Below are positions 1-35,811 of a DNA stretch of 64,000 nt, piece by piece (within the stretch, counting starts at the first letter, position 1; every line of letters begins with the position of its first letter). The notes below the pieces were generated by a model that had not been told where the DNA came from, did no database searches, and saw only the letters and a program-made list of their open reading frames with translations. Source of the stretch: Takakia lepidozioides. Its lineage: Eukaryota > Plantae > Bryophyta. The DNA lies in assembly GCA_030704615.1 (NCBI GenBank), contig CM060733.1:42408001-42472000 (forward strand). Direction: 5' to 3'. The position numbers and the translations under genes are program-made.

Positions 1-1292
1 CTCACGAGATAAGGTTCTCTGATTGAAGAATGAGGCACTTTCGTTCCAACCGTAAGCTTTTTTATGTTTGCTTCTCCTTGTTTAGCGACAAAAATCTTGC
101 TCACTATGGGCAAGCATGCGCTCAAGGCTAAATTAGCTTGCCCGACACGATTACCATATACCCCCAGCCGCCTTCCCCATTGTAAGCGGTGGCTAAAATG
201 GCGTCAAACGGAAGGCTCTATACGCCCGTGTTTTGGAAAGAAAGAAGGCCTCGGAAATATCCAAGGGTTGGGATTCCCCTCGGAGCCGAGCACCCCTTCG
301 ATCCAAGTTGCCCGGGCGGGCAATGACTAGACTCTCGACTTCTCTAAGTGTGGAGACACAAAAAGAGTTAAGGTATTTTATTCCAAACAAGTTTCGCTTG
401 ATTGCTCAAGCTCATCAGTGCAACACCAAGAGATGAAGTCCTAAGAGCCAAGCCTATCCTTATATACTAGAAAAACACACTCACTATGTGCAAACGATAT
501 GGGATAATTCCCAAGGCAATAATAATGCCACTAAAGCACTAATTTAGCCTCCAAGTCAAGACTGCATTAATTAGTCAATGGTCCAAATTAATTGTTGGAA
601 CCCTTTGACTTTAACATCAACACTAGGGTTATCAAAGAGGCAAAATTAATAATGCTAGGGACATTTGCACTACAAGATCATCCTATCATTCTAGATTTAA
701 CTAAGAATGAACTCAGCTTTCGCGGGTTCCTCCAACAAATCATCGTTCAAGGAAGAAATCGAAGCTCCGGGACTTGCTGAAGCAACTCGTGGAGTCTAGG
801 GTTTAGGGTGACCCCCAAGTTCAAGGCTCGAGTGTACGAAGAGTAGTCGAGCTTAAGAACAAGGGGGGCCCGTTTACCCTCAACTACGCGTTGCGTCTGT
901 TGGTCGAGTAGAGCGGATCTGAGGTCGTAGGAGATCTTGGTGAAGCAACTCCGGATGAACGCCGCTGGATAACCTCGGGCTCGAAGACATTTGTAAAACA
1001 AAAGTCGCAAATGGTTGAACCCTTGGATGGTGCTTTCTCGTATTACGTACTGTTGGAGCTCGCCGATGACGAAAGCTTTCTTTTGGTGATGTGGATGTCA
1101 TGAGGACCAAGGCAAGTATTGATACTTGTTCTGGGCTTTTTGATGATATCTGGTAGAGAGCCGTCGAGTTTGGATGAAGTCGTCTCATTTAAAGAAGGTG
1201 ATATGCAAGATGTCGGCAAACGTCGGGCTTATGGCAGTCGTGATTTTGATGCCATCGAACATGGAACCGTAGTTCCGTAACTAGGACCAAAA
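1..1292 (-). mobile_element. Penelope-like element family A, copy 1 (diverged, 5'-truncated; pLTR plus RT C-terminal remnant 678-1292)
   Basis: Colinear with 1966-3510 and 10163-11710 but with many substitutions and a 254-bp deletion at 128/129. Translation LRARGYPAAFIRSCF...KRAPLVLKLDYS matches the RT C-terminus. Confidence 0.9.
381..423 (-). ncRNA. Minimal hammerhead ribozyme (family A), stem I mutated
   Basis: Minus strand TTGCA-CTGATGA-GCTTGA GCAA TCAAGC-GAAAC TT GTT-TGGAA; one stem I mismatch relative to the other A copies. Confidence 0.8.
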
Positions 1293-1630
1293 GCTGAGCT
1301 CATCAGTGGGAAAGAAAAAGAATGAGATACAAACCCCACCCCCCGCTTATATACTACTAGGAGTGAACTGCCTCGTGTGGACAATCTTCCAGTGGATGTC
1401 TCGTGAGGAGAAAAACCATCCAACAAACGTCACGTACGGAGAGAATAGTCCAAAAAGTCTCGGTGGGAGAAAGTCATCCAGTGGATGAAAACAAGTTCTC
1501 GACAAGAGAGAACTAGATCCAAAGAATAAAAAATCATCCAAATAGTCAATTGCATATCTCTCAAATACAACTAACTCCGTGAGTTTATGACTATGCAACA
1601 ACCAATTATACTGAAGTTACAGCATGTTGT
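1293..1630 (-). mobile_element. Family C fragment joined directly to A copy 1
   Basis: Matches 6122-6455; starts inside the ribozyme (GAGCTCATCAGTGGG). Confidence 0.85.
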
Positions 1631-1712
1631 TTAAAGGATTAGGGTTTAAGGGTTTAAGGGTTTAAGGGTTTTTAGGGTTTAGGGGTTAGGGTTTAGGGTT
1701 AGGGTTTAGGGT
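1631..1712 (+). repeat. Degenerate telomeric tract (TTTAGGG/TTTAAGGG/TTAGGG variants)
   Basis: Direct reading, about 11 units. Confidence 0.95.
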
Positions 1713-1774
1713 TCACATAAAGCGTCAAAACAAGTGTAGCCGTACCTCACAAGTTTAGGGTTTAGGGTTTAGGG
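1713..1774 (+). repeat. 33-bp family C stub, CTCACAAG linker (1746-1753) and (TTTAGGG)3
   Basis: TCACATAAAGCGTCAAAACAAGTGTAGC is the start of the C cDNA, followed by CTCACAAG and telomeric repeats 1754-1774. Confidence 0.9.
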
Positions 1775-4700
1775 TGGTTAGCAAAGGCTTGCAAAGGTAA
1801 CAAAAAGTAGAAAAATACTGGAAAAAGACACAGTAAAAATTAAGGGGGGCCGGTTCGGACCCAAATACAAATGCAATGGAAACCAAGACAAATGCATACA
1901 AAGTGCGCCTATCGTGCCTAAAGGGATGCAATAAGACTATTATGTCTTATGCAAGGACTCCCGCCCTCACGAGATAAGGTTCTCTAATTGAAGAATGAGG
2001 CACTTTCGTTCCAACCGTAAGCTTTTTTATGTTTGCTTCTCCTTGTTTAGCGACAAAAATCTTGCTCACTATGGGCAAGCATGCGCTCAAGGCACTCACA
2101 AACATAGGGTCAAGTCTCAACCCCTAGTTGGAAAACTTATATGCCCCACCTTCAAAAAGAGGTTCGTACCTCTAAGGAAGAATGGGAGGGATTACCGCAT
2201 AAGGTCATCGACGAGAAGGTTAGGTCGGCAGAGGCTTGCGCATGCCCATAGTCCTCTGATCGCTCGAGATGAACTCGAGGGAGGATCAACCAAATCCCTT
2301 CTCTCCGACCATCGGGCGTACGACAGGGGGAACCGTGTAGTCGGGGCTAAATTAGCTTGCCCGACACGATTACCATATACCCCCAGCCGCCTTCCCCATT
2401 GTAAGCGGTGGCTAAGATGGCGTCAAACGGAAGGCTCTATACGCCCGTGCTTCGGAAAGAAAAAAGGCCTCGGAAGTATCCAAGGGTTGGGATTCCCTCG
2501 GAGCCGAGCACCCCTTCGATCCAAGTTGCCCGGGCGGGCAAGGACTAGACTCTCGACTTCTCTAAATGTGGAGACACAAAAAGAGTTAAGGTGTTTTATT
2601 CCAAACAAGTTTCGCTTGATTGCTCAAGCTCATCAGTGGAACACCAAGAGATGAAGTCCTAAGAGCCAAGCCTATCCTTATATACTAGAAAAACACCCTC
2701 ACTATGTGCAAACGATATGGGATAATTCCCAAGGCAATAATAATGCCACTAAAGCACTAATTTAGCCTCCAAGTCAAGACTGCATTAATTAGTCAATGGT
2801 CCAAATTAATTGTTGGAACCCTTTGACTTTAACATCAACACTAGGGCTATCAAAGAGGCAAAATTAATAATGCTAGGGACATTTGCACTACAAAAATCAT
2901 CCTATCATTCTAGATTTAACTAGGAATGAACTCAGTTTTCGCGGATTCCTCCAACAAATCATCGCTCGAGGAAGAAACCGAAGCTCCGGGACTTGCTGAA
3001 GCAACTCGTGGAGTCTAGGGTTAGGGTGGCCCCCAAGTTCAAGGCTCGAGTGTACGAAGAGTAGTCGAGCTTAAGAACAAGGGGGGCCCGTTTACCCTCA
3101 ACTGCGCGTTGCGTCTGTTGGTCGAGTAGAGCGGATTTGAGGTCGTAGGAGATCTTGGTGAAGCAACTCCGGATGAACGCCGCCGGATAACCTCGGGCTC
3201 GAAGACGTTTGTAAAACAAAAGTCGCAAATGGTTGAACCCTTGGATGGTGCTTTCTCGTATTACGTACCGTTGGAGCTCGCCGATGACGAAAGCTTTCTT
3301 TTGGTGATGTGGATGCCACGAGGACCAAGGCAAGTATTGATACTTGTTCTGGGCCTTTTGATGACATCTCGTAGAGAGCCGTCGAGTTTGGATGAAGTCG
3401 TCTCCTTTGAGGAAGGTGATATCCAAGATGTCGGCGGACGTCGGGCTTATGGCGGTCGTGATTTTGATGCCATCGAACATGGAACCGTAGTTCCGTAACC
3501 AGGACCGGAGGCTCTTTTCGGAGCCTACCCAGATGCCAAAGCCGTCGTCGATATAGCGCTTAAGATAAAGCAGCTCTTGCTCCGATGGGCACACGTACTC
3601 CATGTACATCTCCAACCGACAGAGGAACAAACAAGCGTAAACAACTGCAAAGTTGCTCCCATGGCCGTCCCGCGAATTTGGTGCCAAAAACTACCATTGA
3701 ACTCAAGGTAATGGTGTTTCAAGACTAATCCAGCGAGGGTCATGATCAGGTCTTTTTTGTGTTTGGTGAAATTACCTCCAATAGCACATTCGAGCTCATA
3801 CAAGCCGAGCTCGGTGATGATGCTGGGATATAGAGATTCCACGTCAAACGTAAAAAGAAGAGCATGCGAGGGGACCTCGAGTTGGGAAACCTCTCGAAGA
3901 AGCGTGAGAGAATCAACCAAATGAGTGGGTTCCTTGAGAAGTACCGGAAGGAGTTGGTGATGGAGCCAAATTGAAGCATGCTCGAAGATGTAGTTGTTGT
4001 AGGAACAAATGGGTCTTCCAACAAGCACGGGTTTGTGCACCTTCGGAATGAAGTACAAAGCACAAGCTCGAAAGTCCGTGGACGACCGAGGGCGTTGGCG
4101 GATGTAATTCCATTCTTTGGTGGAGATCGCAAACCTGTAGATTGGATGGCAAGCCAACACCTCCAACCTCGACCAAAGTTCTTCCCACGGTACGGAATCC
4201 ACGGGACGATAAACTTCGGTGTCTGAGAGTTGCCGCATCGCCTCTTGCATGTACCAAGACTTGTCCATAAGCACAAGACCAAGATTTTTGTCGGCCGGCT
4301 TGATGACAAGGTCCGGATCCGACCTCAATCTTTTGAGAGCAAGTCTCAAGTGTCTCGGCAGACAAGGTCGTGCATTGCGGGCGATTCGATCCAAACGGCT
4401 AGACAAAAGATCATTACCTTCTCGAATGATGGCCTCGAGCGGTTGAGATTCCACTGGCGGATTGAATGATGGATTCGGAACGCGCCAAAGAGGAACCTCG
4501 TCGTTGTCTTTGCCCGAGAAGAACGTTCGCAACCTCAAGCTTCGAGCAAAATTGTTGAATTCGGTGATGATTGAAGATCGGGAAGGGGGAAGAGGACGAG
4601 GAATGTAATTGAGACCAAGGCCCAGGAGTTGTCGCTCCGCAAAGGAGAGAACCCTCTTGCTATAGTTGTGGATAGCAGTGTTGGTGACCCTGCATTCCAC

Positions 4701-4877
4701 TTGGGAGGGAGTCTTCCTAGCAAAGAGCAACAAAGCGTAAGCCTTCGGGTCTACGAGCGGGTACCAGAAGAGACTCCTCGTGCGCCCCCGCGTCTGTGAG
4801 GAGGTACGTATGGCCGCTTCGTCTTCCTCGTCGTCGTCGTCGCACCCTTCGTCGTGGCCGGTTTTCCGTTGACCCTC
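1775..4877 (-). mobile_element. PLE family A copy 2 (pLTR plus whole RT core with 1-nt frameshifts, truncated within ORF1)
   Basis: Near-identical to 9977-13076. ORFs 3525-4733 and 2959-3687 carry KPADKNLG, FTFDVESLY, GTAMG and RYIDDG; single-base deletions near 3021 and 3657. Confidence 0.95.
2599..2641 (-). ncRNA. Minimal hammerhead ribozyme (family A)
   Basis: Minus strand TTCCA-CTGATGA-GCTTGA GCAA TCAAGC-GAAAC TT GTT-TGGAA: catalytic boxes, 6-bp stem II with GNRA loop, 5-bp stem I. Confidence 0.9.
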
Positions 4878-4933
4878 ACAAGTTTAGGGTTTAGGGTTTA
4901 GGGGTTTAGGGTTTAGGGGTTTAGGGTTTAGGG
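4875..4933 (+). repeat. CTCACAAG linker and telomeric tract (about 7 units) capping A copy 2
   Basis: Direct reading; includes two TTTAGGGG variants. Confidence 0.95.
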
Positions 4934-5568
4934 TTTACATAAAGCGTCAAAACAAGTGTAGCAGTACAACGCGGATGCACCGGGTGCAAGATAAACACGA
5001 TCCGGGCAAACGAGTTTTAGGGGGGCGAGTTATGCACCCTTGGAAAAATTTCAGATCCTGTGAATCAAACCTGAAAGGAGAGATCCTGAGAGACAGGAAA
5101 CTAGAATAGAAGTATGCGAGGTGTCCTGAAATGCAACTGCAAACCTATGCAAGAGGCAAATGTGCGTATGAGAATTATTTCACTGGATGCACAGGAGAAT
5201 AAGAACCCTATCTCTGTTTTGCAAGAGAATGGACACACTAGGAACAACTTAGATGCAGATCTCATATGCACTACTCGAAAGGGAGTTTATGGCATAGAAT
5301 AGAAGTATGCGAGGTGTCCTGAAATGCAACTGCAAACCTATGCAAGAGGCAAATGTGCGTATGAGAACTATTTCACTGGATGCACAGGAGAATAAGAACC
5401 ATATCTCTGTTTTGCAAGAGAATGGACACACTAGGAACAACTTAGATGCAGATCTCACATGCACGACTCGAAAGGGAGTTTATGGCATGCCGTATAGACA
5501 CAGAGCACATAACAATGCAATGATCTAAAGCAGGGGATACAAACGCATCTAAAACTCGACAACTTCAA
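4934..5568 (-). mobile_element. Family C fragment with internal 193-bp tandem duplication
   Basis: Matches 5598-6040; GAATAGAAGTATGCG...GGAGTTTATGGCAT is repeated at 5104 and 5297. Confidence 0.9.
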
Positions 5569-5597
5569 GTTTAGGGTTTAGGGTTTAGGGTTTAGGG
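5569..5597 (+). repeat. (TTTAGGG)4 telomeric tract
   Basis: Direct reading. Confidence 0.95.
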
Positions 5598-6096
5598 TTC
5601 ACATAAAGCATCAAAACAAGTGTAGCAGTACAACGCGGATGCACCGGGTGCAAGATAAACACGATCCGGGCAAACAAGTTTTAGGGGGGGGCCAGTTATG
5701 CACCCCTGGAAAAATTTCAGATCCTGTGAATCAAACCTGAAAGGAGAGATCCTGAGAGACAGGAAACTAGAATAGAAGTATGCGAGGTGTCCTGAAATGC
5801 AACTGCAAACCTATGCAAGAGGCAAATGTGCGTATGAGAACTATTTCACTGGATGCACAGGAGAATAAGAACCCTATCTCTGTTTTGCAAGAGAATGGAC
5901 ACACTAGGAACAACTTAGATGCAGATCTCCCATGCACTACTCGAGAGGGAGTTTATGGCATGCCGTATAGACACAGGGCACATAACAATGCAATGATCTA
6001 AAGCAGGGGATACAAACGCATCTAAAACTCGACAACTTCAAAGGGTGAGACTACGAGGCAAGATCATGCAAAGTAGTGAAGCCAAATCTTTATAGA

Positions 6097-6138
6097 CCCC
6101 AGACTAGTTTCGCTCAGCGCGTGAGCTCATCAGTGGGA
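6097..6138 (-). ncRNA. Minimal hammerhead ribozyme (family C)
   Basis: Minus strand TCCCA-CTGATGA-GCTCA CGCGC TGAGC-GAAAC TA GTC-TGGGG; GUC cleavage triplet, palindromic ACTAGT stem III. Confidence 0.92.
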
Positions 6139-7253
6139 AAGAAAAGGAATGAGATACAAACCCCACCCCCCGCTTATATACTACTAGGAGTGAACTGCCT
6201 CGTGTGGACAATCTTCCAGTGGAGGTCTCGTGAGGAGAAAAACCATCCAACAGATGTCTCGTACGGAGAGAATAGTCCAAAAAGTCTCGGTGGGAGAAAG
6301 TCATCCAGTGGATGAAAACAAGTTCTCGACAAGAGAGAACTAGATCCAAAGAATAAAAATCATCCAAATAGTCAATTGCATATCTCTCAAATACAACTAA
6401 CTCCGTGAGTTTATGACTATGCAACAACCAATTATGCTGAAGTTAGAGCATGTTGTGCAAAGTCGTAAGGGCTGAAACCACTTCGAAAGGAACGCACAAC
6501 TCGTAAGAGCTTTTGCACACGCAGACCATCGCGCAACCATCGTCTTGCTAAAGCCTGCAGCTGTGTTGTCCTGAACGTGTCCAACCACGATCCCCACCTT
6601 CCGACCTCCAAGACGAAACACGGCTCGGTCTTCGTATTGTTGCCTCATCACATGAATGAGCAGCTTGGTCAAAAGAATGAAGATCAACATCTGCCTCCAT
6701 TACGTGAAGGCGATTAAAGATGTGTTGCAGCTAACACTGTAAGAAAGTTTAGGGTTCACATAAAGCGTCAAAACAAGTGTAGCAGTACAACGCGGATGCA
6801 CCGGGTGCAAGATAAACACGATCCGGGCAAACAAGTTTTAGGGGGGGGGCAGTTATGCACCCCTGGAAAAATTTCAGATCCTGTGAATCAAACCTGAAAG
6901 GAGAGATCCTGAGAGACAGGAAACTAGAATAGAAGTATGCGAGGTGTCCTGAAATGCAACTGCAAACCTATGCAAGAGGCAAATGTGCGTATGAGAACTA
7001 TTTCACTGGATGCACAAGAGAATAAGAACCCTATCTCTGTTTTGCAAGAGAATGGACACACTAGGAACAACTTAGATGCAGATCTCCCATGCACTACTCG
7101 AGAGGGAGTTTATGGCATGCCGTATAGACACAGAGCACATAACAATGCAATGATCTAAAGCAGGGGATACAAACGCATCTAAAACTCGACAACTTCAAAG
7201 GGTGAGACTACGAGGCAAGATCATGCAAAGTAGTGAAGCCAAATCTTTATAGA

Positions 7254-7295
7254 CCCCAGACTAGTTTCGCTCAGCGCGTGAGCTCATCAGTGGGA
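7254..7295 (-). ncRNA. Minimal hammerhead ribozyme (family C)
   Basis: Same sequence as 6097-6138. Confidence 0.92.
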
Positions 7296-8409
7296 AAGAA
7301 AAGGAATGAGATACAAACCCCACCCCCCGCTTATATACTACTAGGAGTGAACTGCCTCGTGTGGACAATCTTCCAGTGGAGGTCTCGTGCGGAGAAAAAC
7401 CATCCAACAGATGTCTCGTACGGAGAGAATAGTCCAAAAAGTCTCGGTGGGAGAAAGTCATCCAGTGGATGAAAACAAGTTCTCGACAAGAGAGAACTAG
7501 ATCCAAAGAATAAAAATCATCCAAATAGTCAATTGCATATCTCTCAAATACAACTAACTCCGTGAGTTTATGACTATGCAACAACCAATTATGCTGAAGT
7601 TAGAGCATGTTGTGCAAAGTCGTAAGGGCTGAAACCACTTCGAAAGGAACGCACAACTCGTAAGAGCTTTTGCACACGCAGACCATCGCGCAACCATCGT
7701 CTTGCTAAAGCCTGCAGCTGTGTTGTCCTGAACGTGTCCAACCACGATCCCCACCTTCCGACCTCCAAGACGAAACACGGCTCGGTCTTCGTATTGTTGC
7801 TTCATCACATGAATGAGCAGCTTGGTCAAAAGAATGAAGATCAACATCTGCCTCCATTACGTGAAGGCGATTAAAGATGTGTTGCAGCTAACACTGTAAG
7901 AAAGTTTAGGGTTCACATAAAGCATCAAAACAAGTGTAGCAGTACAACGCGGATGCACTGGGTGCAAGATAAACACGATCCGGGCAAACAAGTTTTAGGG
8001 GGGGGCAGTTATGCACCCCTGGAAAAATTTCAGATCCTGTGAATCAAACCTGAAAGGAGAGATCCTGAGAGACAGGAAACTAGAATAGAAGTATGCGAGG
8101 TGTCCTGAAATGCAACTGCAAACCTATGCAAGAGGCAAATGTGCGTATGAGAACTATTTCACTGGATGCACAGGAGAATAAGAACCCTATCTCTGTTTTG
8201 CAAGAGAATGGACACACTAGGAACAACTTAGATGCAGATCTCCCATGCACTACTCGAGAGGGAGTTTATGGCATGCCGTATAGACACAGAGCACATAACA
8301 ATGCAATGATCTAAAGCAGGGGATACAAACGCATCTAAAACTCGACAACTTCAAAGGGTGAGACTACGAGGCAAGATCATGCAAAGTAGTGAAGCCAAAT
8401 CTTTATAGA

Positions 8410-8451
8410 CCCCAGACTAGTTTCGCTCAGCGCGTGAGCTCATCAGTGGGA
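8410..8451 (-). ncRNA. Minimal hammerhead ribozyme (family C)
   Basis: Same sequence as 6097-6138. Confidence 0.92.
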
Positions 8452-8511
8452 AAGAAAAGGAATGAGATACAAACCCCACCCCCCGCTTATATACTACTAG
8501 GAGTGAACTGC

Positions 8512-8538
8512 CACAAGTTTAGGGTTTAGGGCTTAGGG
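8512..8538 (+). repeat. CACAAG linker and 3 telomeric repeats
   Basis: CACAAG TTTAGGG TTTAGGG CTTAGGG. Confidence 0.92.
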
Positions 8539-9952
8539 TTCACATAAAGCATCAAAACAAGTGTAGCAGTACAACGCGGATGCACCGGGTGCAAGATAAA
8601 CACGATCCGGGCAAACAAGTTTTAGGGGGGCCACTTATGCACCCCTGGAAAAATTTCAGATCCTGTGAATCAAACCTGAAAAGAGAGATCCTGAGAGACA
8701 GGAAACTAGAATAGAAGTATGCGAGGTGTCCTGAAATGCAACTGCAAACCTATGCAAGAGGCAAATGTGCGTATGAGAACTATTTCACTGGATGCACAGG
8801 AGAATAAGAACCCTATCTCTGTTTTGCAAGAGAATGGACACACTAGGAACAACTTAGATGCAGATCTCACATGCACTACTCGAAAGGGAGTTTATGGCAT
8901 AGAATAGAAGTATGCGAGGTGTCCTGAAATGCAACTGCAAACCTATGCAAGAGGCAAATGTGCGTATGAGAACTATTTTCACTGGATGCACAGGAGAATA
9001 AGAACCCTATCTCTGTTTTGCAAGAGAATGGACACACTGGGAACAACTTAGATGCAGATCTCACATGCACTACTCGAAAGGGAGTTTATGGCATGCCGTA
9101 TAGACACAGGGCACATAACAATGCAATGATCTAAAGCAGGGGATACAAACGCATCTAAAACTCGACAACTTCAAAGGGTGAGACCACGAGGCAAGATCAT
9201 GCAAAGTAGTGAAGCCAAATCTTTATAGACCCCAGACTAGTTTCGCTCAGCGCGTGAGCTCATCAGTGGGAAAGAAAAGGAATGAGATACAAACCCCACC
9301 CCCCGCTTATATACTACTAGGAGTGAACTGCCTCGTGTGGACAATCTTCCAGTGGATGTCTCGTGAGGAGAAAAACCATCCAACAGATGTCTCGTACGGA
9401 GAGAATAGTCCAAAAGTCTCGGTGGGAGAAAGTCATCCAGTGGATGAAAACAAGTTCTCGACAAGAGAGAACTAGATCCAAAGAATAAAAATCATCCAAA
9501 TAGTCAATTGCATATCTCTCAAATACAACTAACTCCGTGAGTTTATGACTATGCAACAACCAATTATGCTGAAGTTAGAGCATGTTGTGCAAAGTCGTAA
9601 GGGCTGAAACCACTTCGAAAGGAACGCACAACTCGTAAGAGCTTTTGCACACGCAGACCATCGCGCAACCATCGTCTTGCTAAAGCCTGCAGCTGTGTTG
9701 TCCTGAACGTGTCCAACCACGATCCCCACCTTCCGACCTCCAAGACGAAACACGGCTCGGTCTTCGTATTGTTGCCTCATCACATGAATGAGCAGCTTGG
9801 TCAAAAGAATGAAGATCAACATCTGCCTCCATTACGTGAAGGCGATTAAAGATGTGTTGCAGCTAACACTGTAAGAAAGTTTAGGGTTCACATAAAGCGT
9901 CAAAACAAGTGTAGCAGTACAACGCGGATGCACCGGGTGCAAGATAAACACG
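8539..9952 (-). mobile_element. Family C, one full unit (with the 193-bp duplication) plus a 66-bp start of the next
   Basis: Same unit as 5598-6754; seamless internal junction at 9880-9886. Confidence 0.9.
9230..9271 (-). ncRNA. Minimal hammerhead ribozyme (family C)
   Basis: Same sequence as 6097-6138. Confidence 0.92.
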
Positions 9953-9976
9953 GGTTTAGGGTTTAGGGTTTAGGGT
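9953..9976 (+). repeat. Telomeric tract (about 3 units)
   Basis: Direct reading. Confidence 0.95.
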
Positions 9977-10795
9977 TTAGCAAAGGCTTGCAAAGGTAAA
10001 AAAATAGAAAAATACTGGAAAAAGACACAGTAAAAATTAAGGGGGGCCGGTTCGGACCCAAATACAAATGCAATGGAAACCAAGACAAATGCATACAAAG
10101 TGCGCCTATCGTGCCTAAAGGGATGCAATAAGACTATTATGTCTTATGCAAGGACTCCCGCCCTCACGAGATAAGGTTCTCTAATTGAAGAATGAGGCAC
10201 TTTCGTTCCAACCGTAAGCTTTTTTATGTTTGCTTCTCCTTGTTTAGCGACAAAAATCTTGCTCACTATGGGCAAGCATGCGCTCAAGGCACTCACAAAC
10301 ATAGGGTCAAGTCTCAACCCCTAGTTGGAAAACTTATATGCCCCACCTTCAAAAAGAGGTTCGTACCTCTAAGGAAGAATGGGAGGGATTACCGCATAAG
10401 GTCATCGACGAGAAGGTTAGGTCGGCAGAGGCTTGCGCATGCCCATAGTCCTCTGATCGCTCGAGATGAACTCGAGGGAGGATCAACCAAATCCTTCTCT
10501 CCGACCATCGGGCGTACGACAGGGGGAACCGTGTAGTCGGGGCTAAATTAGCTTGCCCGACACGATTACCATATACCCCCAGCCGCCTTCCCCATTGTAA
10601 GCGGTGGCTAAGATGGCGTCAAACGGAAGGCTCTATACGCCCGTGCTTCGGAAAGAAAAAAGGCCTCGGAAGTATCCAAGGGTTGGGATTCCCCTCGGAG
10701 CCGAGCACCCCTTCGATCCAAGTTGCCCGGGCGGGCAAGGACTAGACTCTCGACTTCTCTAAATGTGGAGACACAAAAAGAGTTAAGGTGTTTTA

Positions 10796-10838
10796 TTCCA
10801 AACAAGTTTCGCTTGATTGCTCAAGCTCATCAGTGGAA
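10796..10838 (-). ncRNA. Minimal hammerhead ribozyme (family A)
   Basis: Same sequence as 2599-2641. Confidence 0.9.
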
Positions 10839-10874
10839 CACCAAGAGATGAAGTCCTAAGAGCCAAGCCTATCC

Positions 10875-10882
10875 TTATATAC
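10875..10882 (-). promoter_or_regulatory. Putative TATA box of the family A pLTR
   Basis: GTATATAA about 48 nt upstream of the ribozyme core; same motif and spacing in B and C. Confidence 0.6.
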
Positions 10883-11093
10883 TAGAAAAACACCCTCACT
10901 ATGTGCAAACGATATGGGATAATTCCCAAGGCAATAATAATGCCACTAAAGCACTAATTTAGCCTCCAAGTCAAGACTGCATTAATTAGTCAATGGTCCA
11001 AATTAATTGTTGGAACCCTTTGACTTTAACATCAACACTAGGGCTATCAAAGAGGCAAAATTAATAATGCTAGGGACATTTGCACTACAAAAA

Positions 11094-13205
11094 TCATCCT
11101 ATCATTCTAGATTTAACTAGGAATGAACTCAGCTTTCGCGGATTCCTCCAACAAATCATCGCTCGAGGAAGAAACCGAAGCTCCGGGACTTGCTGAAGCA
11201 ACTCGTGGAGTCTAGGGTTTAGGGTGGCCCCCAAGTTCAAGGCTCGAGTGTACGAAGAGTAGTCGAGCTTAAGAACAAGGGGGGCCCGTTTACCCTCAAC
11301 TGCGCGTTGCGTCTGTTGGTCGAGTAGAGCGGATCTGAGGTCGTAGGAGATCTTGGTGAAGCAACTCCGGATGAACGCCGCCGGATAACCTCGGGCTCGA
11401 AGACGTTTGTAAAACAAAAGTCGCAAATGGTTGAACCCTTGGATGGTGCTTTCTCGTATTACGTACCGTTGGAGCTCGCCGATGACGAAAGCTTTCTTTT
11501 GGTGATGTGGATGCCACGAGGACCAAGGCAAGTATTGATACTTGTTCTGGGCCTTTTGATGACATCTCGTAGAGAGCCGTCGAGTTTGGATGAAGTCGTC
11601 TCCTTTGAGGAAGGTGATATCCAAGATGTCGGCGGACGTCGGGCTTATGGCGGTCGTGATTTTGATGCCATCGAACATGGAACCGTAGTTCCGTAACCAG
11701 GACCGGAGGCTCTTTTCGGAGCCTACCCAGATGCCAAAGCCGTCGTCGATATAGCGCTTAAGATAAAGCAGCTCTTGCTCCGATGGGCACACGTACTCCA
11801 TGTACATCTCCAACCGACAGAGGAACAAACAAGCGTAAACAACTGCAAAGTTGCTCCCCATGGCCGTCCCGCGAATTTGGTGCCAAAAACTACCATTGAA
11901 CTCAAGGTAATGGTGTTTCAAGACTAATCCAGCGAGGGTCATGATCAGGTCTTTTTTGTGTTTGGTGAAATTACCTCCAATAGCACATTCGAGCTCATAC
12001 AAGCCGAGCTCGGTGATGATGCTGGGATATAGAGATTCCACGTCAAACGTAAAAAGAAGAGCATGCGAGGGGACCTCGAGTTGGGAAACCTCTCGAAGAA
12101 GCGTGAGAGAATCAACCAAATGAGTGGGTTCCTTGAGAAGTACCGGAAGGAGTTGGTGATGGAGCCAAATTGAAGCATGCTCGAAGATGTAGTTGTTGTA
12201 GGAACAAATGGGTCTTCCAACAAGCACGGGTTTGTGCACCTTCGGAATGAAGTACAAAGCACAAGCTCGAAAGTCCGTGGACGACCGAGGGCGTTGGCGG
12301 ATGTAATTCCATTCTTTGGTGGAGATCGCAAACCTGTAGATTGGATGGCAAGCCAACACCTCCAACCTCGACCAAAGTTCTTCCCACGGTACGGAATCCA
12401 CGGGACGATAAACTTCGGTGTCTGAGAGTTGCCGCATCGCCTCTTGCATGTACCAAGACTTGTCCATAAGCACAAGACCAAGATTTTTGTCGGCCGGCTT
12501 GATGACAAGGTCCGGATCCGACCTCAATCTTTTGAGAGCAAGTCTCAAGTGTCTCGGCAGACAAGGTCGTGCATTGCGGGCGATTCGATCCAAACGGCTA
12601 GACAAAAGATCATTACCTTCTCGAATGATGGCCTCGAGCGGTTGAGATTCCACTGGCGGATTGAATGATGGATTCGGAACGCGCCAAAGAGGAACCTCGT
12701 CGTTGTCTTTGCCGGAGAAGAACGTTCGCAACCTCAAGCTTCGAGCAAAATTGTTGAATTCGGTGATGATTGAAGATCGGGAAGGGGGAAGAGGACGAGG
12801 AATGTAATTGAGACCAAGGCCCAGGAGTTGTCGCTCCGCAAAGGAGAGAACCCTCTTGCTATAGTTGTGGATAGCAGTGTTGGTGACCCTGCATTCCACT
12901 TGGGAGGGAGTCTTCCTAGCAAAGAGCAACAAAGCGTAAGCCTTCGGGTCTACGAGCGGGTACCAGAAGAGACTCCTCGTGCGCCCCCGTGTCTGTGAGG
13001 AGGTACGTATGGCCGCTTCATCTTCGTCATCGTGGTCGTCGCACCCTTTGCCGTGGCCGGTTTTCCGTTGACCCTCGCTGAAGGTTTTCGGCCTCCCGTA
13101 CCAGAGCCGGTTGTGCGGTTCGGGCCTGACCTCTTGTTGAAAGAGGTAGGTGACGCAGCAGAACGGGTGGAGACCCGGATACCTTTCTGCTGCTTGCCGT
13201 TTCCC
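11094..13205 (-). CDS. Penelope-like reverse transcriptase, endonuclease-lacking (frame extends upstream of the 12932 TTG to a -1 frameshift site)
   Basis: LLGLGLNYIP, KPADKNLG, PKVHKP...GRPICS, FTFDVESLYPSI, GTAMGSNFA, KRYIDDGF, YLPWSSWHP. The frame is open and conserved with family B up to 13205, with no in-frame ATG between 13205 and the 12932 TTG. Confidence 0.93.
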   Translation of the reverse strand, partial: GKRQAAERYPGLHPFCCVTYLFQQEVRPEPHNRLWYGRPKTFSEGQRKTGHGKGCDDHDDEDEAAIRTSSQTRGRTRSLFWYPLVDPKAYALLLFARKTPSQVECRVTNTAIHNYSKRVLSFAERQLLGLGLNYIPRPLPPSRSSIITEFNNFARSLRLRTFFSGKDNDEVPLWRVPNPSFNPPVESQPLEAIIREGNDLLSSRLDRIARNARPCLPRHLRLALKRLRSDPDLVIKPADKNLGLVLMDKSWYMQEAMRQLSDTEVYRPVDSVPWEELWSRLEVLACHPIYRFAISTKEWNYIRQRPRSSTDFRACALYFIPKVHKPVLVGRPICSYNNYIFEHASIWLHHQLLPVLLKEPTHLVDSLTLLREVSQLEVPSHALLFTFDVESLYPSIITELGLYELECAIGGNFTKHKKDLIMTLAGLVLKHHYLEFNGSFWHQIRGTAMGSNFAVVYACLFLCRLEMYMEYVCPSEQELLYLKRYIDDGFGIWVGSEKSLRSWLRNYGSMFDGIKITTAISPTSADILDITFLKGDDFIQTRRLSTRCHQKAQNKYQYLPWSSWHPHHQKKAFVIGELQRYVIRESTIQGFNHLRLLFYKRLRARGYPAAFIRSCFTKISYDLRSALLDQQTQRAVEGKRAPLVLKLDYSSYTRALNLGATLNPRLHELLQQVPELRFLPRAMICWRNPRKLSSFLVKSRMIG

Positions 13206-14002
13206 GACTTTCCGCCAGGATTCGCCTTAGGCTTACTAGCCGGTTTGGTCCCAAGCTTCTGGGCCTTAGGTTTCACCTGGATGGAATTCACCACCTTTTT
13301 CACCTCCTTGAGTACTTCCTTGACCACCTCGCGTTTCACGAGGGTAGCAATGGACGGTTCCACAGGGAGGGTCTCCGCTTCTTCCATAGCACCTTCCCGA
13401 GCAACGTTGCGAGCTGCGATAGCCGCGGCCTTGCTGACGTCGGAAAGTTGTTTGTGAATGAGAAATGCATCTACATGAGTAACGAAGAGATTGCTAAGAT
13501 GAAGATGCCACGACTCGATGGAAGACTTAGACTTGTCACCTATCAAATTTAAGGATCGTAAAGACGAAATCAAATCCGAGAGGCGAGTCTCAAAGACCGG
13601 TTTCGATTGCTCGAGCTTGTGGGTCAAGCTAGCAAGTCGAGATTCTTGGGCTTTGATGAGTGCTTCAAAGCACTTGATCCGATATGCGGTTGTGCATTCG
13701 GCCAGGCTCGCATCAAGGACGGATTGGGCCTCGGGATCTCCTATTTGAAGTTTAGGAGGACTCATTCTAAGGGAGTTGGGTATGGTGCCTTCTTCGAATT
13801 GCACTCGCAATTTTTGAAGGTACTTGGAAGTCTTTTCATGCTCATGCCTAAGACTTTTGAATTCCTTGACCGATGTATGCACAAATGCAAGCAAAGGGGG
13901 AGGAATGGAGATATCCATGCTAGAAGAAGTAGACGCGGATGCATGAGAAGGGCCGACGCCTAAGCTAGGACATGGACGTTTGTTACCTGCTAGTTCCGCC
14001 AT
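12950..14002 (-). CDS. PLE family A ORF1 (350 aa; helical/coiled-coil N-half, basic low-complexity C-tail; probable nucleic-acid-binding protein)
   Basis: Intact ATG ORF. Shares G.IP..LR/CR...PKL.I, RN.AR..AM..A..LP.EP.IA.LV..EV and GNG with family B ORF1. Confidence 0.85.
   Translation of the reverse strand: MAELAGNKRPCPSLGVGPSHASASTSSSMDISIPPPLLAFVHTSVKEFKSLRHEHEKTSKYLQKLRVQFEEGTIPNSLRMSPPKLQIGDPEAQSVLDASLAECTTAYRIKCFEALIKAQESRLASLTHKLEQSKPVFETRLSDLISSLRSLNLIGDKSKSSIESWHLHLSNLFVTHVDAFLIHKQLSDVSKAAAIAARNVAREGAMEEAETLPVEPSIATLVKREVVKEVLKEVKKVVNSIQVKPKAQKLGTKPASKPKANPGGKSGNGKQQKGIRVSTRSAASPTSFNKRSGPNRTTGSGTGGRKPSARVNGKPATAKGATTTMTKMKRPYVPPHRHGGARGVSSGTRS
13155..13205 (-). promoter_or_regulatory. 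-1 programmed ribosomal frameshift signal (G_GGA_AAC, 5-nt spacer, hairpin)
   Basis: Heptamer 13205-13199 in the ORF1 phase; stem GCAGCAGAA/TTCTGCTGC with inner CGGGT/ACCCG; the -1 frame is the RT frame. Confidence 0.8.
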
Positions 14003-14012
14003 GGAAAAAGGA

Positions 14013-14027
14013 GTTTAGGGTTTAGGG
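14013..14027 (-). promoter_or_regulatory. Element-encoded (CCCTAAA)2C just upstream of the ORF1 ATG; putative telomere-annealing/priming site
   Basis: A copies 2 and 3 begin at or within a few bases of this site after telomeric tracts (1775, 9977). Confidence 0.75.
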
Positions 14028-14317
14028 TGGTCAACAAAGGCTTGCAAAGATAACAAAACGTAGAAAAAATACTGGAAAAAGACATAGTAAATTTTAAGGG
14101 GGGCCGGTTAGGACCCAAATACAAATGCAATGGAAACCAAGACAAATGCATACAAAGTGCGCCTACCGTGCCTAAAGGGATGCTATAAGACTATTATGTC
14201 TTATGCAAGGACTCCCGCCCTCACGAGATAAGGTTCTCTAATTGAAGAATGAGGCACTTTCGCTCCAACCGTAAGCTTTTTTATGTTTGCTTCTCCTTGT
14301 TTAGCGACAAAAATCTT

Positions 14318-14346
14318 CTCACAAGTTTAGGGTTTAGGGTTTAGGG
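14318..14346 (+). repeat. CTCACAAG linker and (TTTAGGG)3
   Basis: Direct reading. Confidence 0.95.
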
Positions 14347-14817
14347 TCTACAAAAGAGTGGAAACAAATACATGTAGCAGTGCAACAGAGTTCGAACCGC
14401 GAATGCACCGGGTGCATTAGTAGCAAAGTGCAAACAAGTTTTTAGGGGGGCCAGTTATGGACACCTTAGAAAGCTTGTAGAAATATCTAGCCTGTGAATC
14501 AAAACTAAAAGAATCGATCCTGAGACACAAAACTAGAATAGAACAGAGTGGGAGTGATGTTGCAACGTTCTAAAGTGCAAATGCAAGTATATGCAAGAGG
14601 CAAGTGTGTGTGATGAAACTAATTCACTGTAAGGACAGGAGAATAGTAACCTATCTCTAAGAAAGAGAATAGACACACTAAAGAGCAGTCTTAGAAGGAG
14701 ATCTAACATGTAACACTCGAAAAGGAGTTTAAAACATGCACTACAATAGACACAAAGCAAATGAATGCAATGAACTATGCAGAAGATCAAATCTAAAACT
14801 CAACAACAACAACAACG
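14347..14817 (-). mobile_element. Family B pLTR segment, inverted relative to 17104-17573
   Basis: Reverse complement of 17104-17573; begins at the B CCCTAAAC site. Confidence 0.92.
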
Positions 14818-14820
14818 AGA

Positions 14821-16711: not shown

Positions 16712-17588
16712 AGGCTAGTTGTATTTGAGACATGCAGTTAGCTTCTAGTTTGGATGATTATCCATTTTGGAGAGAACATTAGGATGTTTTTCATCTAGAT
16801 TTTCATGCGTTGGATATTTCTCCCCTGCCGAGAAAACTTTGGATGTTTTTCATCTAAGTTTTCATGTGTTGGACGATCTCTCCAGCCAAGACAATTTGGA
16901 TGTTTTCCATCCATTAGGTATTTTCTCTCCCCCCGAGACAAGTTCACTTTCCGCAGTATATAAGCGGGGTGAGGGTGCACATTGTATCTCTTTTCCTTCT
17001 CTTTCCCACTGATGAGCTCACGCGCTGAGCGAAACTAGTTTGGGGATTATAGAGATTCGCTTTGCTGCATCTTGTGTTCTTGTCTCTTTGTCTCATTGGC
17101 GGCGTTGTTGTTGTTGTTGAGTTTTAGATTTGATCTTCTGCATAGTTCATTGCATTCATTTGCTTTGTGTCTATTGTAGTGCATGTTTTTAAACTCCTTT
17201 TCGAGTGTTACATGTTAGATCTCCTTCTAAGACTGCTCTTTAGTGTGTCTATTCTCTTTCTTAGAGATAGGTTACTATTCTCCTGTCCTTACAGTGAATT
17301 AGTTTCATCACACACACTTGCCTCTTGCATATACTTGCATTTGCACTTTAGAACGTTGCAACATCACTCCCACTCTGTTCTATTCTAGTTTTGTGTCTCA
17401 GGATCGATTCTTTTAGTTTTGATTCACAGGCTAGATATTTCTACAAGCTTTCTAAGGTGTCCATAACTGGCCCCCCTAAAACTTGTTTGCACTTTGCTAC
17501 TAATGCACCCGGTGCATTCGCGGTTCGAACTCTGTTGCACTGCTACATGTATTTGTTTCCACTCTTTTGTAGACCCTAAACATTTGTT
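16712..17588 (+). repeat. Family B pLTR / inter-ORF region (TATA 16956-16963, ribozyme, CCCTAAAC 17574-17581)
   Basis: Homologous to family C; partly repeated at 14347-14817 (inverted) and 44076-44397. Confidence 0.85.
17003..17046 (+). ncRNA. Minimal hammerhead ribozyme (family B)
   Basis: TTCCCA-CTGATGA-GCTCA CGCGC TGAGC-GAAAC TA GTT-TGGGGA. Confidence 0.9.
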
Positions 17589-31186: not shown

Positions 31187-32030
31187 TGCTTCATCAATTT
31201 TATCGGATTCCATCAACTCATCAATTCATTCCACAGCTTCACTCAGATCTCTCTACACAGTGTGAGTATGAGGTGTGTATCAGATTAATATCTATCAAGT
31301 ATCAGGCTGAAGTCATGGAGTCTCTAATCTGCTCTACATTACAATTCTACTGCCTGCATTCATTAAGCATCAACAGATCCTCCTCCTACTCCGTGCTCTC
31401 CCTCTTTCTGCTCAGAGATACGCTCTCTCCTCCTTTCCCCCAGTGATGTCCGAAGTCTTCCCCAAGAAGTGCTCCTCCCACTCCTTCCAGCAGTGATTCT
31501 TCCCCCGAAGTCATCCAAGAAAATCCCCTTTTTCAGTCCTTGCTCCTAGCTTTATCTTCCTACCCGTTGTTCTAACCGTTTCCCTCACTAACCGTCGTCC
31601 GTGAACTAACATGTTCCATTCGCAGGTGTTGTTCCCCACAGTCGTTCCCTGTCCTGCTATCCGTTCCCTATGGTCGTGACAGCTGTGTCAAGTTGTGACT
31701 GGCTGTGTGAAACTGTGACCGGCTGTGACCGGCTGTGTCGGGCTGTGGCTGGCTGTGCGACTGTGTTTGGCTGTGTCGGGCTGTGACTGGCTGTGTGGCT
31801 GTGTCGGCTGTGACGGGCTATGTTGGCTGTGATGGGCTGTGTCGGGCTGTGACTGGCTGTGTGGCTGTGTCGGCTATGACGAGCTGTGTTGACTGTGACG
31901 AGCTGTGTAACCCTCCCTAAAGTGCGCTGCTGTCACCCGTAAGGCTCCTGTTGGTCTCAGTCTGTGCAAAAATTAAGGGTACCCCACAGATCCCCGTATA
32001 AGTGTCTAAGTCCCAGACAGTCCTCTAACA
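31187..32030 (-). mobile_element. Partial LTR of Gypsy family D (contains GCTGTG-rich minisatellite 31680-31910)
   Basis: Colinear with 36543-37277; ends CCTCTAACA. Confidence 0.85.
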
Positions 32031-35000: not shown

Positions 35001-35811
35001 AGGTTACTGGTGGCCTACTTTGTTCAAAGATGTACACAAGTATTGCCAGAGTTGTGATGAATGTCAGAGGCTAGGACCTTTGCAAAGATCTAGGAAAATG
35101 GCTTTGCATCCTACAATGCCTACGGAACCATTTCAGAAATGGGGACTAGACTTTGTTGGACCAATTAACCCACCAGCCAAGAATACACAGAACAGGTACA
35201 TAATTACAGCCACTGATTATACTACGAAGTGGGTGGAAGCTAAAGCTTTGAGGGACAACACAGCCAAGTCCACAGCAAGGTTTCTGTATGAGAACATACT
35301 TACACGATTTGGCTGTCCCTTGGAATTTATCAGTGATCATGGAAGTCACTTCATTAATGAGACCATTGAATTGTTGACTAAAGAGTTCATGATTGTGCAT
35401 AGAAAGAGTACAACATATTACCCACAGGGTAATGGGTAGGCAGAGGCTACCAACAAAATACTATGTACTATCTTGGCTAAGATAGTCAATGCAAACAGAA
35501 CGGATTGGGATACAAAGCTGCTGACAGCTTTGTGGTCATACAGGACTTCATATAAAGTCACCACAAAGTATACACCATTCCAATTAGTTTATGGTATGGA
35601 AGCCTTACTTCCAGTGGAATTCCTGTTACCTACCATGAGAACGGAATGGGGAAAGAGAATGGAATTGCAAGATTCCATTAAGGTCAGGAAACATGAATTA
35701 TACCATGTGGAAGAAGTACGTGCTGATGCAGCTGATAATATGACCAGAATTCAGATGAAGAGAAAGGAACAGTTTGATGAAGGCAAGTTAAAGACTTTTA
35801 AGACGGGAGAA
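32038..35811 (+). mobile_element. Gypsy family D pol (PR-RT-RNaseH-INT), disrupted
   Basis: LIDGGSG, FLDDF, HCDASG...YSTTEREALA, GHFG..C..C, WGLDFVGP, ISDHGSHF; stops and frameshifts. Confidence 0.93.

What the first reader, a model, noticed from the sequence alone, without database searches (positions are those of the whole stretch)
5598..9952. Family C: RT-less 1157-bp hammerhead-containing tandem element that parasitises the telomeric PLE machinery
Seen: the unit keeps all cis parts of family B (post-RT TAGTTGTATTTGAGA region, TATA, near-identical ribozyme, TGCACCCGGTGCA palindrome, CCCTAAAC, and GTTAGCTGCAAC of the ORF1 start) but replaces about 3 kb of ORF1-RT with about 300 bp. It accounts for five of the nine array segments. 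Unit junctions (6748, 7905, 9880) are seamless, with only the single intrinsic repeat. Established: retrozymes are non-autonomous hammerhead elements processed to monomeric, often circular RNAs. Inference: a retrozyme-like telomeric satellite whose multimers come from tandem transcripts or rolling-circle copying of a 1157-nt circle. Adjacent units differ by a few substitutions, which slightly favours a tandem donor.
Basis: partly seen in the sequence, partly recalled or inferred. Interest (0 to 1): 0.8.

Follow-up and report, generated by a model that had tools for sequence, protein, structure and literature searches.

The report
Protein-less ribozyme retroelement on telomere repeats
A moss-like plant carries a 1157-base jumping element that has lost its own copying enzyme but kept a promoter box, a self-cutting RNA motif and one telomere-like repeat. 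It has been copied several times onto telomere-type DNA ends, apparently by borrowing the enzyme of neighbouring Penelope-like elements.

Summary
On the minus strand, 5591-8512 is 2.53 head-to-tail units of 1157 bp (99.3-99.5% alike). 8533-9952 is 1.07 units of a subfamily with a 194-bp internal duplication. Every junction carries a single TTTAGGGTT. Further copies lie at 4927-5568, 1705-1745 and 1295-1636 (a chimera).

Each insertion starts at the same base next to a TTTAGGG tract, stops at a different 5' point, and is capped by new repeats. These are therefore separate telomere-primed reverse-transcription events.

The unit has no ORF related to ORF1 or RT. It keeps a family-B-like tail (72% identity) with a TATA box, a minimal type-I hammerhead, a 13-nt palindrome and one CCCTAAAC. 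The hammerhead is supported by covariation across eight plant relatives.

Families A and B are endonuclease-less Penelope-like elements. Their relatives in other plants also form tandem units with one internal CCCTAAAC, so multimers are a clade trait and not special to C.

My reading is a non-autonomous Penelope-like derivative copied in trans. Whether its templates are linear multi-unit RNAs or circles is open. A polymorphism shared between units argues mildly against one homogeneous circle.

It is a new variant of a known kind. The scan noted similar elements elsewhere in this genome (s1-476134, s1-476544).

The parts
4927..5568 (-). Family C, subfamily C2: the 3' 451 nt of the unit plus a 194-bp internal duplication. 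It is 5'-truncated and capped by TTTAGGG repeats at 5570-5597.
5570..5597 (+). (TTTAGGG)4 tract onto which the 2.53-unit copy was primed. Its last repeat is also the first 7 bases of the copy.
5591..6747 (-). Family C unit 1 of the 2.53-unit insertion. It was the first unit copied.
   Evidence: 99.5% to the reference unit
6748..7904 (-). Family C unit 2, used as the reference unit. Sense coordinate s = 7905 minus the window position.
7905..8512 (-). Family C unit 3, partial (q1-609). It ends 17 nt upstream of its TATA box, so its template ran beyond the unit's own promoter.
8513..8532 (+). Untemplated ACAAG linker followed by short TTTAGGG-type repeats. These cap the previous copy and prime the next.
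8533..9879 (-). Family C2 full unit with the 194-bp duplication (duplicated copies span 8707-9094).
9880..9952 (-). First 73 nt of a second unit, continuing seamlessly from the previous one and then capped by TTTAGGG repeats at 9955-9975.
6097..6138 (-). Minimal type-I hammerhead, with predicted cleavage between 6102 and 6101. Identical copies lie at 7254-7295, 8410-8451 and 9230-9271.
6173..6180 (-). TATATAAG box 47 nt upstream of the ribozyme's CUGAUGA. Also present at 7330-7337, 8486-8493 and 9306-9313.
   Evidence: same spacing, -46 to -52, in six families: A, B, C and three other plant relatives; about -60 in Selaginella
6748..6756 (+). The single intrinsic TTTAGGGTT at the unit junction (sense AACCCTAAA). 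The same sequence lies at 7905-7913 and 9880-9888. I propose it as the annealing site for the G-rich DNA end.
6797..6809 (-). 13-nt palindrome TGCACCCGGTGCA, 50 nt before the 3' end and identical in family B. Also at 4976-4988, 5640-5652, 8581-8593 and 9929-9941. The copy in unit 3 carries one substitution.
7557..7880 (-). 324-nt C-specific stretch that stands where ORF1 and RT lie in family B. It has no recognisable coding remnant.
7881..7893 (-). Remnant of the family-B ORF1 start (TGTTAGCTGCAAC) without its start codons.
1295..1636 (-). C-like segment (q532-872, 96.8%) joined inside the ribozyme, at a GCTC microhomology, to codons 398-612 of an A-like RT (681-1325). This is a chimeric copy.
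1705..1745 (-). 41-nt 3' stub of family C, followed by a CTCACAAG linker and TTTAGGG repeats.
16928..17580 (+). Tail of autonomous family B. It is the closest relative of the C cis module, with a ribozyme core at 17009-17048 and a single CCCTAAAC at the junction to the next tandem unit.

Best explanation
Family C is a non-autonomous lineage derived from a family-B-like, endonuclease-less Penelope-like element (PLE).

It has lost ORF1 and RT. It keeps the following parts:
- the first roughly 24 nt of the unit;
- the stretch just after the RT stop;
- a TATA box;
- a dimer-type minimal hammerhead;
- a 511-nt tail with a palindrome;
- one telomere-complement repeat at the unit boundary.

Proposed cycle (inferred):
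1. Transcription starts about 20 nt before the ribozyme in one unit and reads across the boundary into the next unit, as in the pseudo-LTR layout of PLEs.
2. A G-rich TTTAGGG 3' end anneals to the internal AACCCUAAAC.
3. An RT supplied by family A or B, or by an unseen closer master element, copies the RNA towards its 5' end across one or more boundaries.
4. Synthesis aborts at a variable point and telomerase re-caps the end.

Shown directly: the anatomy; the lack of coding capacity; at least five separate insertions with a fixed 3' start and variable 5' ends; and two subfamilies that each moved.

Inferred: the transcription start, ribozyme cleavage, which RT is used, and the physical form of the template.
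For: - Fixed start and variable ends. All copies begin at q1 beside TTTAGGG tracts of different lengths and end at q41, q73, q451, q609 or q872.
- Two subfamilies. C2 (194-bp duplication plus shared variants) was inserted at least twice, and C1 once as 2.53 units.
- No coding capacity. There is no ORF1 or RT similarity, and the ORF1 start is destroyed.
- Ribozyme. 93% of cells are paired, 7 of 11 pairs show compensatory changes, 0 of 500 shuffles reach this, and slid controls reach at most 50%.
- Promoter box. A TATA box sits at -46 to -52 in six families and at about -60 in Selaginella.
- Possible RT donors. The A and B RTs carry the ADKN motif and RT motifs. Pfam finds no endonuclease domain. 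Homologues carry PF28514/PF26215/RVT_1, and the named hits are all plants or streptophyte algae, including Selaginella at 48%.
- Clade-wide layout. B is tandem with a 3926-bp period and one CCCTAAAC. Relatives from other plants assemble as roughly 3.9-kb units with identical contig ends and the same boundary. Cryptomeria has a 4.33-kb period.
- Co-copying of templates. The chimera at 1295 joins C RNA sequence to A-like RT sequence at a microhomology, as expected if both RNAs were copied by the same enzyme.
- Precedent. Internal initiation of reverse transcription has been shown for a PLE RT in vitro (PMC11167929).
Against: - There are no RNA data, so transcription and cleavage are untested.
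- Rfam does not recognise the ribozyme.
- No C copy in this window ends at the predicted cut (q511) or at the predicted transcription start.
- C is only 72% identical to B in the shared tail and has almost no similarity to A. The true helper RT is therefore unknown, and no coding master element with a C-type tail is in the window.
- The chimera could also come from DNA recombination.
- The array now lies in the interior of its assembled chromosome, by the index positions.
Confidence: 0.75

Rival explanations
1. This is a true retrozyme cycle. Tandem transcripts are cut by the hammerhead into 1157-nt monomers and ligated into circles. The multimers are rolling-circle cDNAs primed on the telomere-complement repeat of a circle.
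For: - There is one ribozyme per unit, in the same orientation.
- The cDNAs run seamlessly across 1 to 2 boundaries and pass three ribozyme sites without a break.
- The copy at 7905-8512 extends upstream of its own TATA box, so a transcript started in that unit cannot have been its template.
- A circle would solve the problem of carrying the promoter along.
- Animal non-LTR retrozymes are proposed to work this way and to depend on PLEs (PMC7229834; bioRxiv 10.64898/2026.07.22.740005).
- The monomer folds somewhat better than shuffled sequence (z -2.8).
Against: - Units within one insertion are not identical (6, 4 and 3 differences).
- The A/G state at q20 alternates A-G-A within one insertion and is shared with other insertions. 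Three recurrent hits on one CpG base have P of about 0.001-0.016, so a single homogeneous circle is unlikely.
- The ribozyme is the minimal dimer type, which is weak as a monomer (PMC7761336). In a tested PLE, unprocessed RNA was the main template (PMC11167929).
- Autonomous B and its relatives show the same multimers without any need for circles.
- Folding is only 62% paired, and the antisense strand is similarly stable.
Confidence: 0.25
2. This is a dead internally deleted copy. It was multiplied at the DNA level within the array by unequal exchange between flanking telomere tracts, break-induced replication or segmental duplication. It has no life of its own as a retroelement.
For: - Telomere-repeat arrays are recombination-prone.
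- All copies I could examine lie within 10 kb of each other.
- The variants shared between units could reflect gene conversion.
Against: - The five copies have five different 5' end points, different cap lengths and different linkers.
- All three unit junctions carry exactly one repeat, as in family B and in relatives from other species.
- The neighbouring A copies are not in register with the C copies: offsets are 8175 against 8197-8201.
- Earlier notes of this scan report such passengers on other pieces of the genome. I did not check these.
Confidence: 0.08
3. The tandem units are an assembly artefact, from expansion or mis-joining of repeats.
For: Arrays of near-identical repeats are hard to assemble.
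Against: - Each unit has private substitutions, and the partial units have distinct ends capped by telomere repeats.
- The same architecture is seen in independent assemblies of relatives.
Confidence: 0.03

Closest known systems
Endonuclease-deficient Penelope-like elements (Athena/Coprina; Terminons)
   Same: - The 3' end carries a reverse-complement telomere repeat joined to G-strand repeats.
- Copies are 5'-truncated, capped by telomere repeats and arranged in head-to-tail chains.
- A minimal type-I hammerhead sits in the terminal region.
- The helper RTs in the window have the DKN motif and lack GIY-YIG.
(PMC8557442, PMC6431247, PMC13159263)
   Different: - Family C encodes nothing.
- The ribozyme is 511 nt upstream of the telomere-complement repeat, whereas in Athena/Terminons the repeats lie immediately downstream of it (PMC6431247).
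- There is only one repeat (9 nt), and it lies inside the tandem transcript at the boundary, about 10 nt before ORF1 in the autonomous families.
- I did not place the RT within the Coprina or Athena clade by a tree.
Metazoan non-LTR retrozymes (Cervera and de la Pena 2020; Li et al. 2026 preprint)
   Same: - Non-coding tandem units, each with a type-I hammerhead.
- Sequence kinship with the pseudo-LTR of a PLE.
- Proposed dependence on a PLE RT.
   Different: - The unit is 1157 bp against 150-450 bp.
- The ribozyme is the minimal PLE type and not the canonical form with loop-loop contacts.
- It is found in a plant.
- Insertion is telomere-primed at a defined base.
- At most 2.5 units are seen.
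- Circular RNA has not been shown.
Plant LTR retrozymes
   Same: A non-autonomous, ribozyme-bearing, plant retroelement of about 1 kb.
   Different: - No LTRs.
- No tRNA-Met primer-binding site.
- Type I, not type III, hammerhead.
- The helper is a PLE, not a Ty3/Gypsy element.
Drosophila HeT-A (a telomeric retroelement without its own RT)
   Same: An RT-less element that outnumbers its RT-encoding partners in chromosome-end arrays and is added head-to-tail to the DNA end (PMC5537684).
   Different: - HeT-A encodes Gag and belongs to the non-LTR (jockey) class.
- It replaces telomerase rather than alternating with telomerase repeats.
- It has no ribozyme.

Membership tests
EN-deficient Penelope-like elements (as a non-autonomous derivative) | Encodes a PLE-type RT (DKN motif, RT motifs, thumb) without a GIY-YIG endonuclease | tested here: not met
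   Family C has no RT or ORF1 remnant. The feature is met by neighbouring families A and B. C can therefore only be a dependent derivative.
EN-deficient Penelope-like elements (as a non-autonomous derivative) | 3' end with a reverse-complement telomere repeat, joined to G-strand telomeric repeats | tested here: met
   All copies start at TTTAGGGTT|CAC, in phase with a TTTAGGG tract.
EN-deficient Penelope-like elements (as a non-autonomous derivative) | Variable 5' truncation capped by telomere repeats; head-to-tail chains | tested here: met
   Copy ends are at q41, q73, q451, q609 and q872, each followed by new repeats.
EN-deficient Penelope-like elements (as a non-autonomous derivative) | Minimal type-I hammerhead in the terminal repeat region | tested here: met
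   The core is CUGAUGA...GAAA. Helices I and II covary across 8 sequences. Helix III is a 6-nt palindrome (ACUAGU, or ACCGGU in Selaginella), as in dimer-type PLE ribozymes (PMC7761336).
EN-deficient Penelope-like elements (as a non-autonomous derivative) | Telomere-complement repeats immediately downstream of the hammerhead (Athena/Terminon layout) | tested here: not met
   The distance from the cut to the repeat is 511 nt in C, about 530 nt in B and about 820 nt in A.
Non-LTR retrozymes (metazoan type) | Non-coding tandem repeats, each unit with a type-I hammerhead | tested here: met
   Arrays of 2.53 and 1.07 units with one ribozyme per unit. The arrays are very short.
Non-LTR retrozymes (metazoan type) | Unit of about 150-450 bp | tested here: not met
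   The unit is 1157 bp.
Non-LTR retrozymes (metazoan type) | Canonical hammerhead with a stable helix III and loop 1-loop 2 contacts | tested here: not met
   Helix III is 2 bp closed by 2 nt, which cannot form as a hairpin. Helix I is open with an internal loop.
Non-LTR retrozymes (metazoan type) | Expressed as self-cleaved, circular, highly self-paired RNA | not testable with these tools
   No RNA data are available. Folding gives only z -2.8 and 62% paired, which is inconclusive.
Plant LTR retrozymes | LTRs with type-III hammerheads, a tRNA-Met primer-binding site and a polypurine tract | tested here: not met
   The ribozyme is type I and there are no LTRs. The PBS motif occurs only at 30161 and 58175, in LTR elements.

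The most novel reading that the evidence does not exclude
Family C may be the first plant counterpart of the animal non-LTR retrozymes, and a 'missing link' between autonomous Penelope-like elements and retrozymes.

In this reading, its tandem RNA is cut by hammerheads that only work as dimers and is ligated into 1157-nt circles. The circles are then copied by rolling-circle reverse transcription directly onto chromosome ends. A protein-less ribozyme RNA would thus supply most of the DNA that heals or extends ends, much as HeT-A does in flies.
Probability: 0.2. Interest if true: 0.8.

Novelty: new variant of a known kind. Interest (0 to 1): 0.58.

Why it matters
Telomere-attached Penelope-like elements are regarded as rare in plants. 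The one example cited in the 2025 review is Selaginella (PMC12477314). Ribozyme-bearing non-autonomous partners of PLEs have so far been described only as small animal tandem repeats.

Family C is a large, still recognisable cut-down PLE. It shows which parts are kept when the genes are lost: the boundary, the promoter box, the ribozyme, the tail and one telomere-complement repeat.

Every insertion starts at a known base and records its template up to the point of abortion. Such arrays are therefore a natural read-out of template structure (multi-unit linear RNA or circle) and of whether the ribozyme cuts in vivo. Both questions are open for PLEs in general.

In this array the passenger accounts for five of the nine segments. 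That is relevant to how broken or eroded ends are repaired in early land plants.

Tried and rejected
- **Rfam.** No hammerhead is called for family C, at the gathering threshold or at E up to 10. Only weak Hammerhead_3 hits (E about 5) fall on family A cores.
- **Minimum-free-energy folding of 75-nt ribozyme windows.** This gives helices I and II, but z-scores near 0 for C. It is uninformative for a dimer-type motif.
- **Pfam on the A and B RTs and ORF1s.** No hits in the local copy.
- **PDB sequence search.** Nothing found.
- **Permissive tblastn of ORF1 and RT against the C unit.** Only noise. Two weak blastn hits collinear with B (E 0.16-0.56) are not significant.
- **Exact scan of JGI metagenome contigs for the C/B ribozyme.** No match.
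- **Search of the scan's notes by sequence.** Blank.
- **Papers not held.** Arkhipova et al. 2017 and Gladyshev and Arkhipova 2007 are not in the library, so I relied on later papers that summarise them.
- **Cryptomeria locus and one Logan locus.** No DNA was returned.
- **Local segmental duplication as the source of the C copies.** Rejected, because the copies are out of register with their neighbours and have different ends.
- **RT clade.** I did not build a tree placing the RT in Coprina or Athena, because no reference sequences were at hand.
Full report
**What is in the sequence**

The left 14.8 kb of the window is a chain of retroelement copies. All but one are separated by short TTTAGGG tracts on the plus strand; segment S2 follows directly on the tract that caps S1. 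The elements read in sense on the minus strand.

Along the plus strand, each copy begins with the complement of its own 3' end, in phase with the preceding TTTAGGG tract. It runs towards its 5' end, stops at a variable point, and is followed by a new TTTAGGG tract, often after an untemplated ACAAG/CACAAG linker. This is the signature of cDNA primed on a G-rich telomeric 3' end and later re-capped by telomerase.

The nine segments are as follows:

| Segment | Window position | Content |
|---|---|---|
| S1 | 1-1636 | A-like element joined to a C piece (chimera) |
| S2 | 1705-1745 | C, 41 nt |
| S3 | 1775-4876 | Family A |
| S4 | 4927-5568 | C |
| S5 | 5591-8512 | C |
| S6 | 8533-9952 | C |
| S7 | 9976-14013 | Family A, full length |
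| S8 | 14028-14325 | A-type 3' stub |
| S9 | 14347 to about 14800 | Family B stub |

From about 14.8 kb an inverted family B element lies on the plus strand. It is itself tandem, with a period of 3926 bp.

**The family C unit**

The reference unit is 6748-7904. BLAST against the window and the repeat finder show that S5 is 2.53 units and S6 is 1.07 units. The junctions at 6748, 7905 and 9880 each carry exactly one TTTAGGGTT.

In sense coordinates (s1 = window 7904) the unit reads as follows:

| Sense position | Feature |
|---|---|
| s1-24 | 5' boundary, with 13 bases of the family-B ORF1 start. Its ATGATG is lost and a stop follows after 7 codons |
| s25-348 | 324 nt found only in C |
| s349-390 | 76% identical to the bases just after the B RT stop codon |
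| s540-1114 | 72% identical to the B tail |
| s568-575 | TATATAAG |
| s606-650 | Hammerhead, with predicted cleavage after s646 |
| from s1096 | Palindrome TGCACCCGGTGCA |
| up to s1157 | AACCCTAAA |

In the tandem context the open frames (stop to stop) are 40-112 codons. None resembles ORF1 or RT; the best tblastn E-value is 0.28.

**The ribozyme**

Four C copies carry an identical core. Rfam does not call it. This is expected for the minimal PLE-type hammerhead, whose helix III here is A-U plus C-G closed by only two bases.

I collected the equivalent motif from eight sequences:
- families C, B and A, plus a second A copy;
- three relatives recovered through RT homologues (L001, L005, L006);
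- Selaginella (L004).

On this alignment:
- The hand-drawn helices I, II and III are paired in 93% of cells.
- 7 of 11 pairs show changes on both sides.
- No shuffle out of 500 reaches the observed values.
- Sliding the partners by 1-3 columns drops pairing to 22-50%.
- The helix III stretch is a 6-nt palindrome in six of the seven families (ACUAGU, or ACCGGU in Selaginella). This is the hallmark of PLE hammerheads that cleave as dimers (summarised in PMC7761336).

A TATA-like box lies 46-52 nt upstream of CUGAUGA in six families, and about 60 nt upstream in Selaginella. From this I infer that transcription starts just before the ribozyme.

**The partners**

The RT ORFs of A (11094-12932, minus strand) and B (14777-16711, plus strand) carry the ADKN motif, FDVESLYPS, GTAMGS and YIDDGF. 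The local Pfam copy finds no endonuclease domain.

The word-index protein search gives 120 homologues. The named hits are all plants or streptophyte algae: Selaginella (48%), Cryptomeria, Ginkgo and Closterium. Their precomputed domains are PF28514, PF26215 and RVT_1. One distant hit (29%) carries GIY-YIG. The language-model atlas points to the same families, commonest in rotifers, chordates and arthropods. These are endonuclease-less Penelope-like elements. I did not place them in Coprina or Athena by a tree.

**Multimers are a clade trait**

- Family B is tandem. One CCCTAAAC lies at the boundary, 8 nt before the ORF1 start codon.
- Contigs of relatives from three independent read sets are circular permutations of a 3.9-kb unit with identical ends. 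They have one or two CCCTAAA at the same place, and a ribozyme 150-460 nt upstream.
- Cryptomeria has three gene copies at a 4.33-kb period.

The seamless C junction is therefore inherited design. The telomere-complement site lies inside a transcript that spans unit boundaries. This fits the internal initiation of reverse transcription shown in vitro for a PLE RT (PMC11167929).

It differs from the Athena/Terminon layout, where the repeats lie immediately downstream of the ribozyme (PMC6431247).

**Evidence that C moves as its own lineage**

- The five copies have five different 5' ends and different caps.
- S4 and S6 share the 194-bp duplication and two substitutions, so they form a subfamily that was inserted at least twice. 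S5 lacks both.
- Neighbouring A copies are out of register with the C copies, which excludes a simple block duplication.
- In S1 the cDNA switches from an A-like RT sequence into C sequence inside the ribozyme, at a GCTC microhomology. This is what a template switch between two RNAs copied by one enzyme would leave, although DNA recombination is not excluded.

**Linear multi-unit RNA or a circle?**

S5 passes three ribozyme sites and ends 17 nt upstream of the TATA box of its last unit. Its template was therefore either a long uncleaved read-through RNA from a donor of at least three to four units, or a re-ligated circle.

- Units within S5 differ at 6, 4 and 3 sites.
- The state at q20 runs A-G-A in S5 and A-G in S6, and both states occur in other insertions.
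- Three independent hits on one CpG base have a probability of about 0.001-0.016 under uniform CpG decay.

The units therefore most likely came from non-identical template units, unless gene conversion acted later. This argues mildly against one homogeneous circle.

The cleaved monomer folds only moderately better than shuffled sequence (z -2.8, 62% paired), and the antisense strand is similar. No copy here ends at the predicted cut.

**Comparison with what is known**

- Telomere-attached EN-minus PLEs with hammerheads are known, including in Selaginella (PMC8557442, PMC12477314).
- Animal non-LTR retrozymes are small tandem repeats with canonical type-I hammerheads. They are now argued to derive from PLE pseudo-LTRs (PMC7229834; bioRxiv 10.64898/2026.07.22.740005).
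- Plant retrozymes are LTR-type, with type-III ribozymes (PMC4918200).

In four full-text searches I found no description of a protein-less, PLE-derived, telomere-primed ribozyme element in a plant. Family C fails the size and ribozyme-type criteria of both retrozyme families. The tRNA-Met primer-binding site is also absent.

I therefore file C as a new variant: a non-autonomous EN-minus PLE derivative that works like a retrozyme precursor. The same scan has already noted such passengers on other DNA of this genome (s1-476134, s1-476544).

**Caveat on position**

The scan's position index places other notes more than 21 Mb before and more than 17 Mb beyond this window on the same piece. If so, the array is interstitial today. 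The rest of the window is full of LTR retrotransposons.

Noticed in passing
window 681-1636: A chimeric copy. C sequence (q532-872) is joined inside the hammerhead, at a GCTC microhomology, to codons 398-612 of an A-like RT (89% identical to A). This is probably a template switch during reverse transcription.
   Followed up: partly
window 1746-1753, 4874-4882, 8513-8517, 14320-14325: An untemplated (CT)CACAAG or ACAAG linker lies between the truncated 5' end of a copy and the newly added TTTAGGG repeats. This is the subject of another note of the scan.
   Followed up: no
window 14347-19540: A family B stub in minus sense abuts an inverted family B element on the plus strand. That element is tandem, with a 3926-bp period and 100% identity over about 680 bp. 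Its RT ORF is intact (14777-16711), but ORF1 of the second unit is cut short (17589-18128, against the 347-aa version at 44398-45441).
   Followed up: partly
window about 6836-6858; 17468-17490; 10045-10062; L001 about 2850: A conserved run of C followed by TAAAAC or TTAA lies about 95 nt before the 3' end in families C, B, A and a relative. It may be a second telomere-like site. Its role is unknown.
   Followed up: no
L001-L003, L005 (Logan/ENA contigs), Cryptomeria contig: Relatives of the RT assemble as 3.9-kb contigs with identical ends, in different circular permutations. In Cryptomeria there are three gene copies at a 4.33-kb period. These PLEs are therefore tandem, or circular, in several plants.
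   Followed up: partly
window 1629-1713: An irregular telomere tract with variant repeats (TTTAAGGG, TTAGGG, TTTTAGGG) caps the chimeric copy. The tracts elsewhere in the array are cleaner TTTAGGG repeats.
   Followed up: no
window 61736-63929: A family A pair in inverted orientation (RT pieces 62974-61736 minus and 62971-63582 plus), with an A-type hammerhead core at 63889-63929 on the plus strand.
   Followed up: no
window 31682-31908, 37013-37155, 41572-41814: Three minisatellites built on a 10-bp GGCTGTG-type unit lie inside or beside LTR-retrotransposon sequence. Gag-protease is at 42246-43976, and integrase at 34564-35439 and 20209-21156.
   Followed up: no
whole window: By the scan's position index, the window lies more than 21 Mb from one end and more than 17 Mb from the other end of its assembled piece. 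The telomere-primed array is therefore interstitial today.
   Followed up: no
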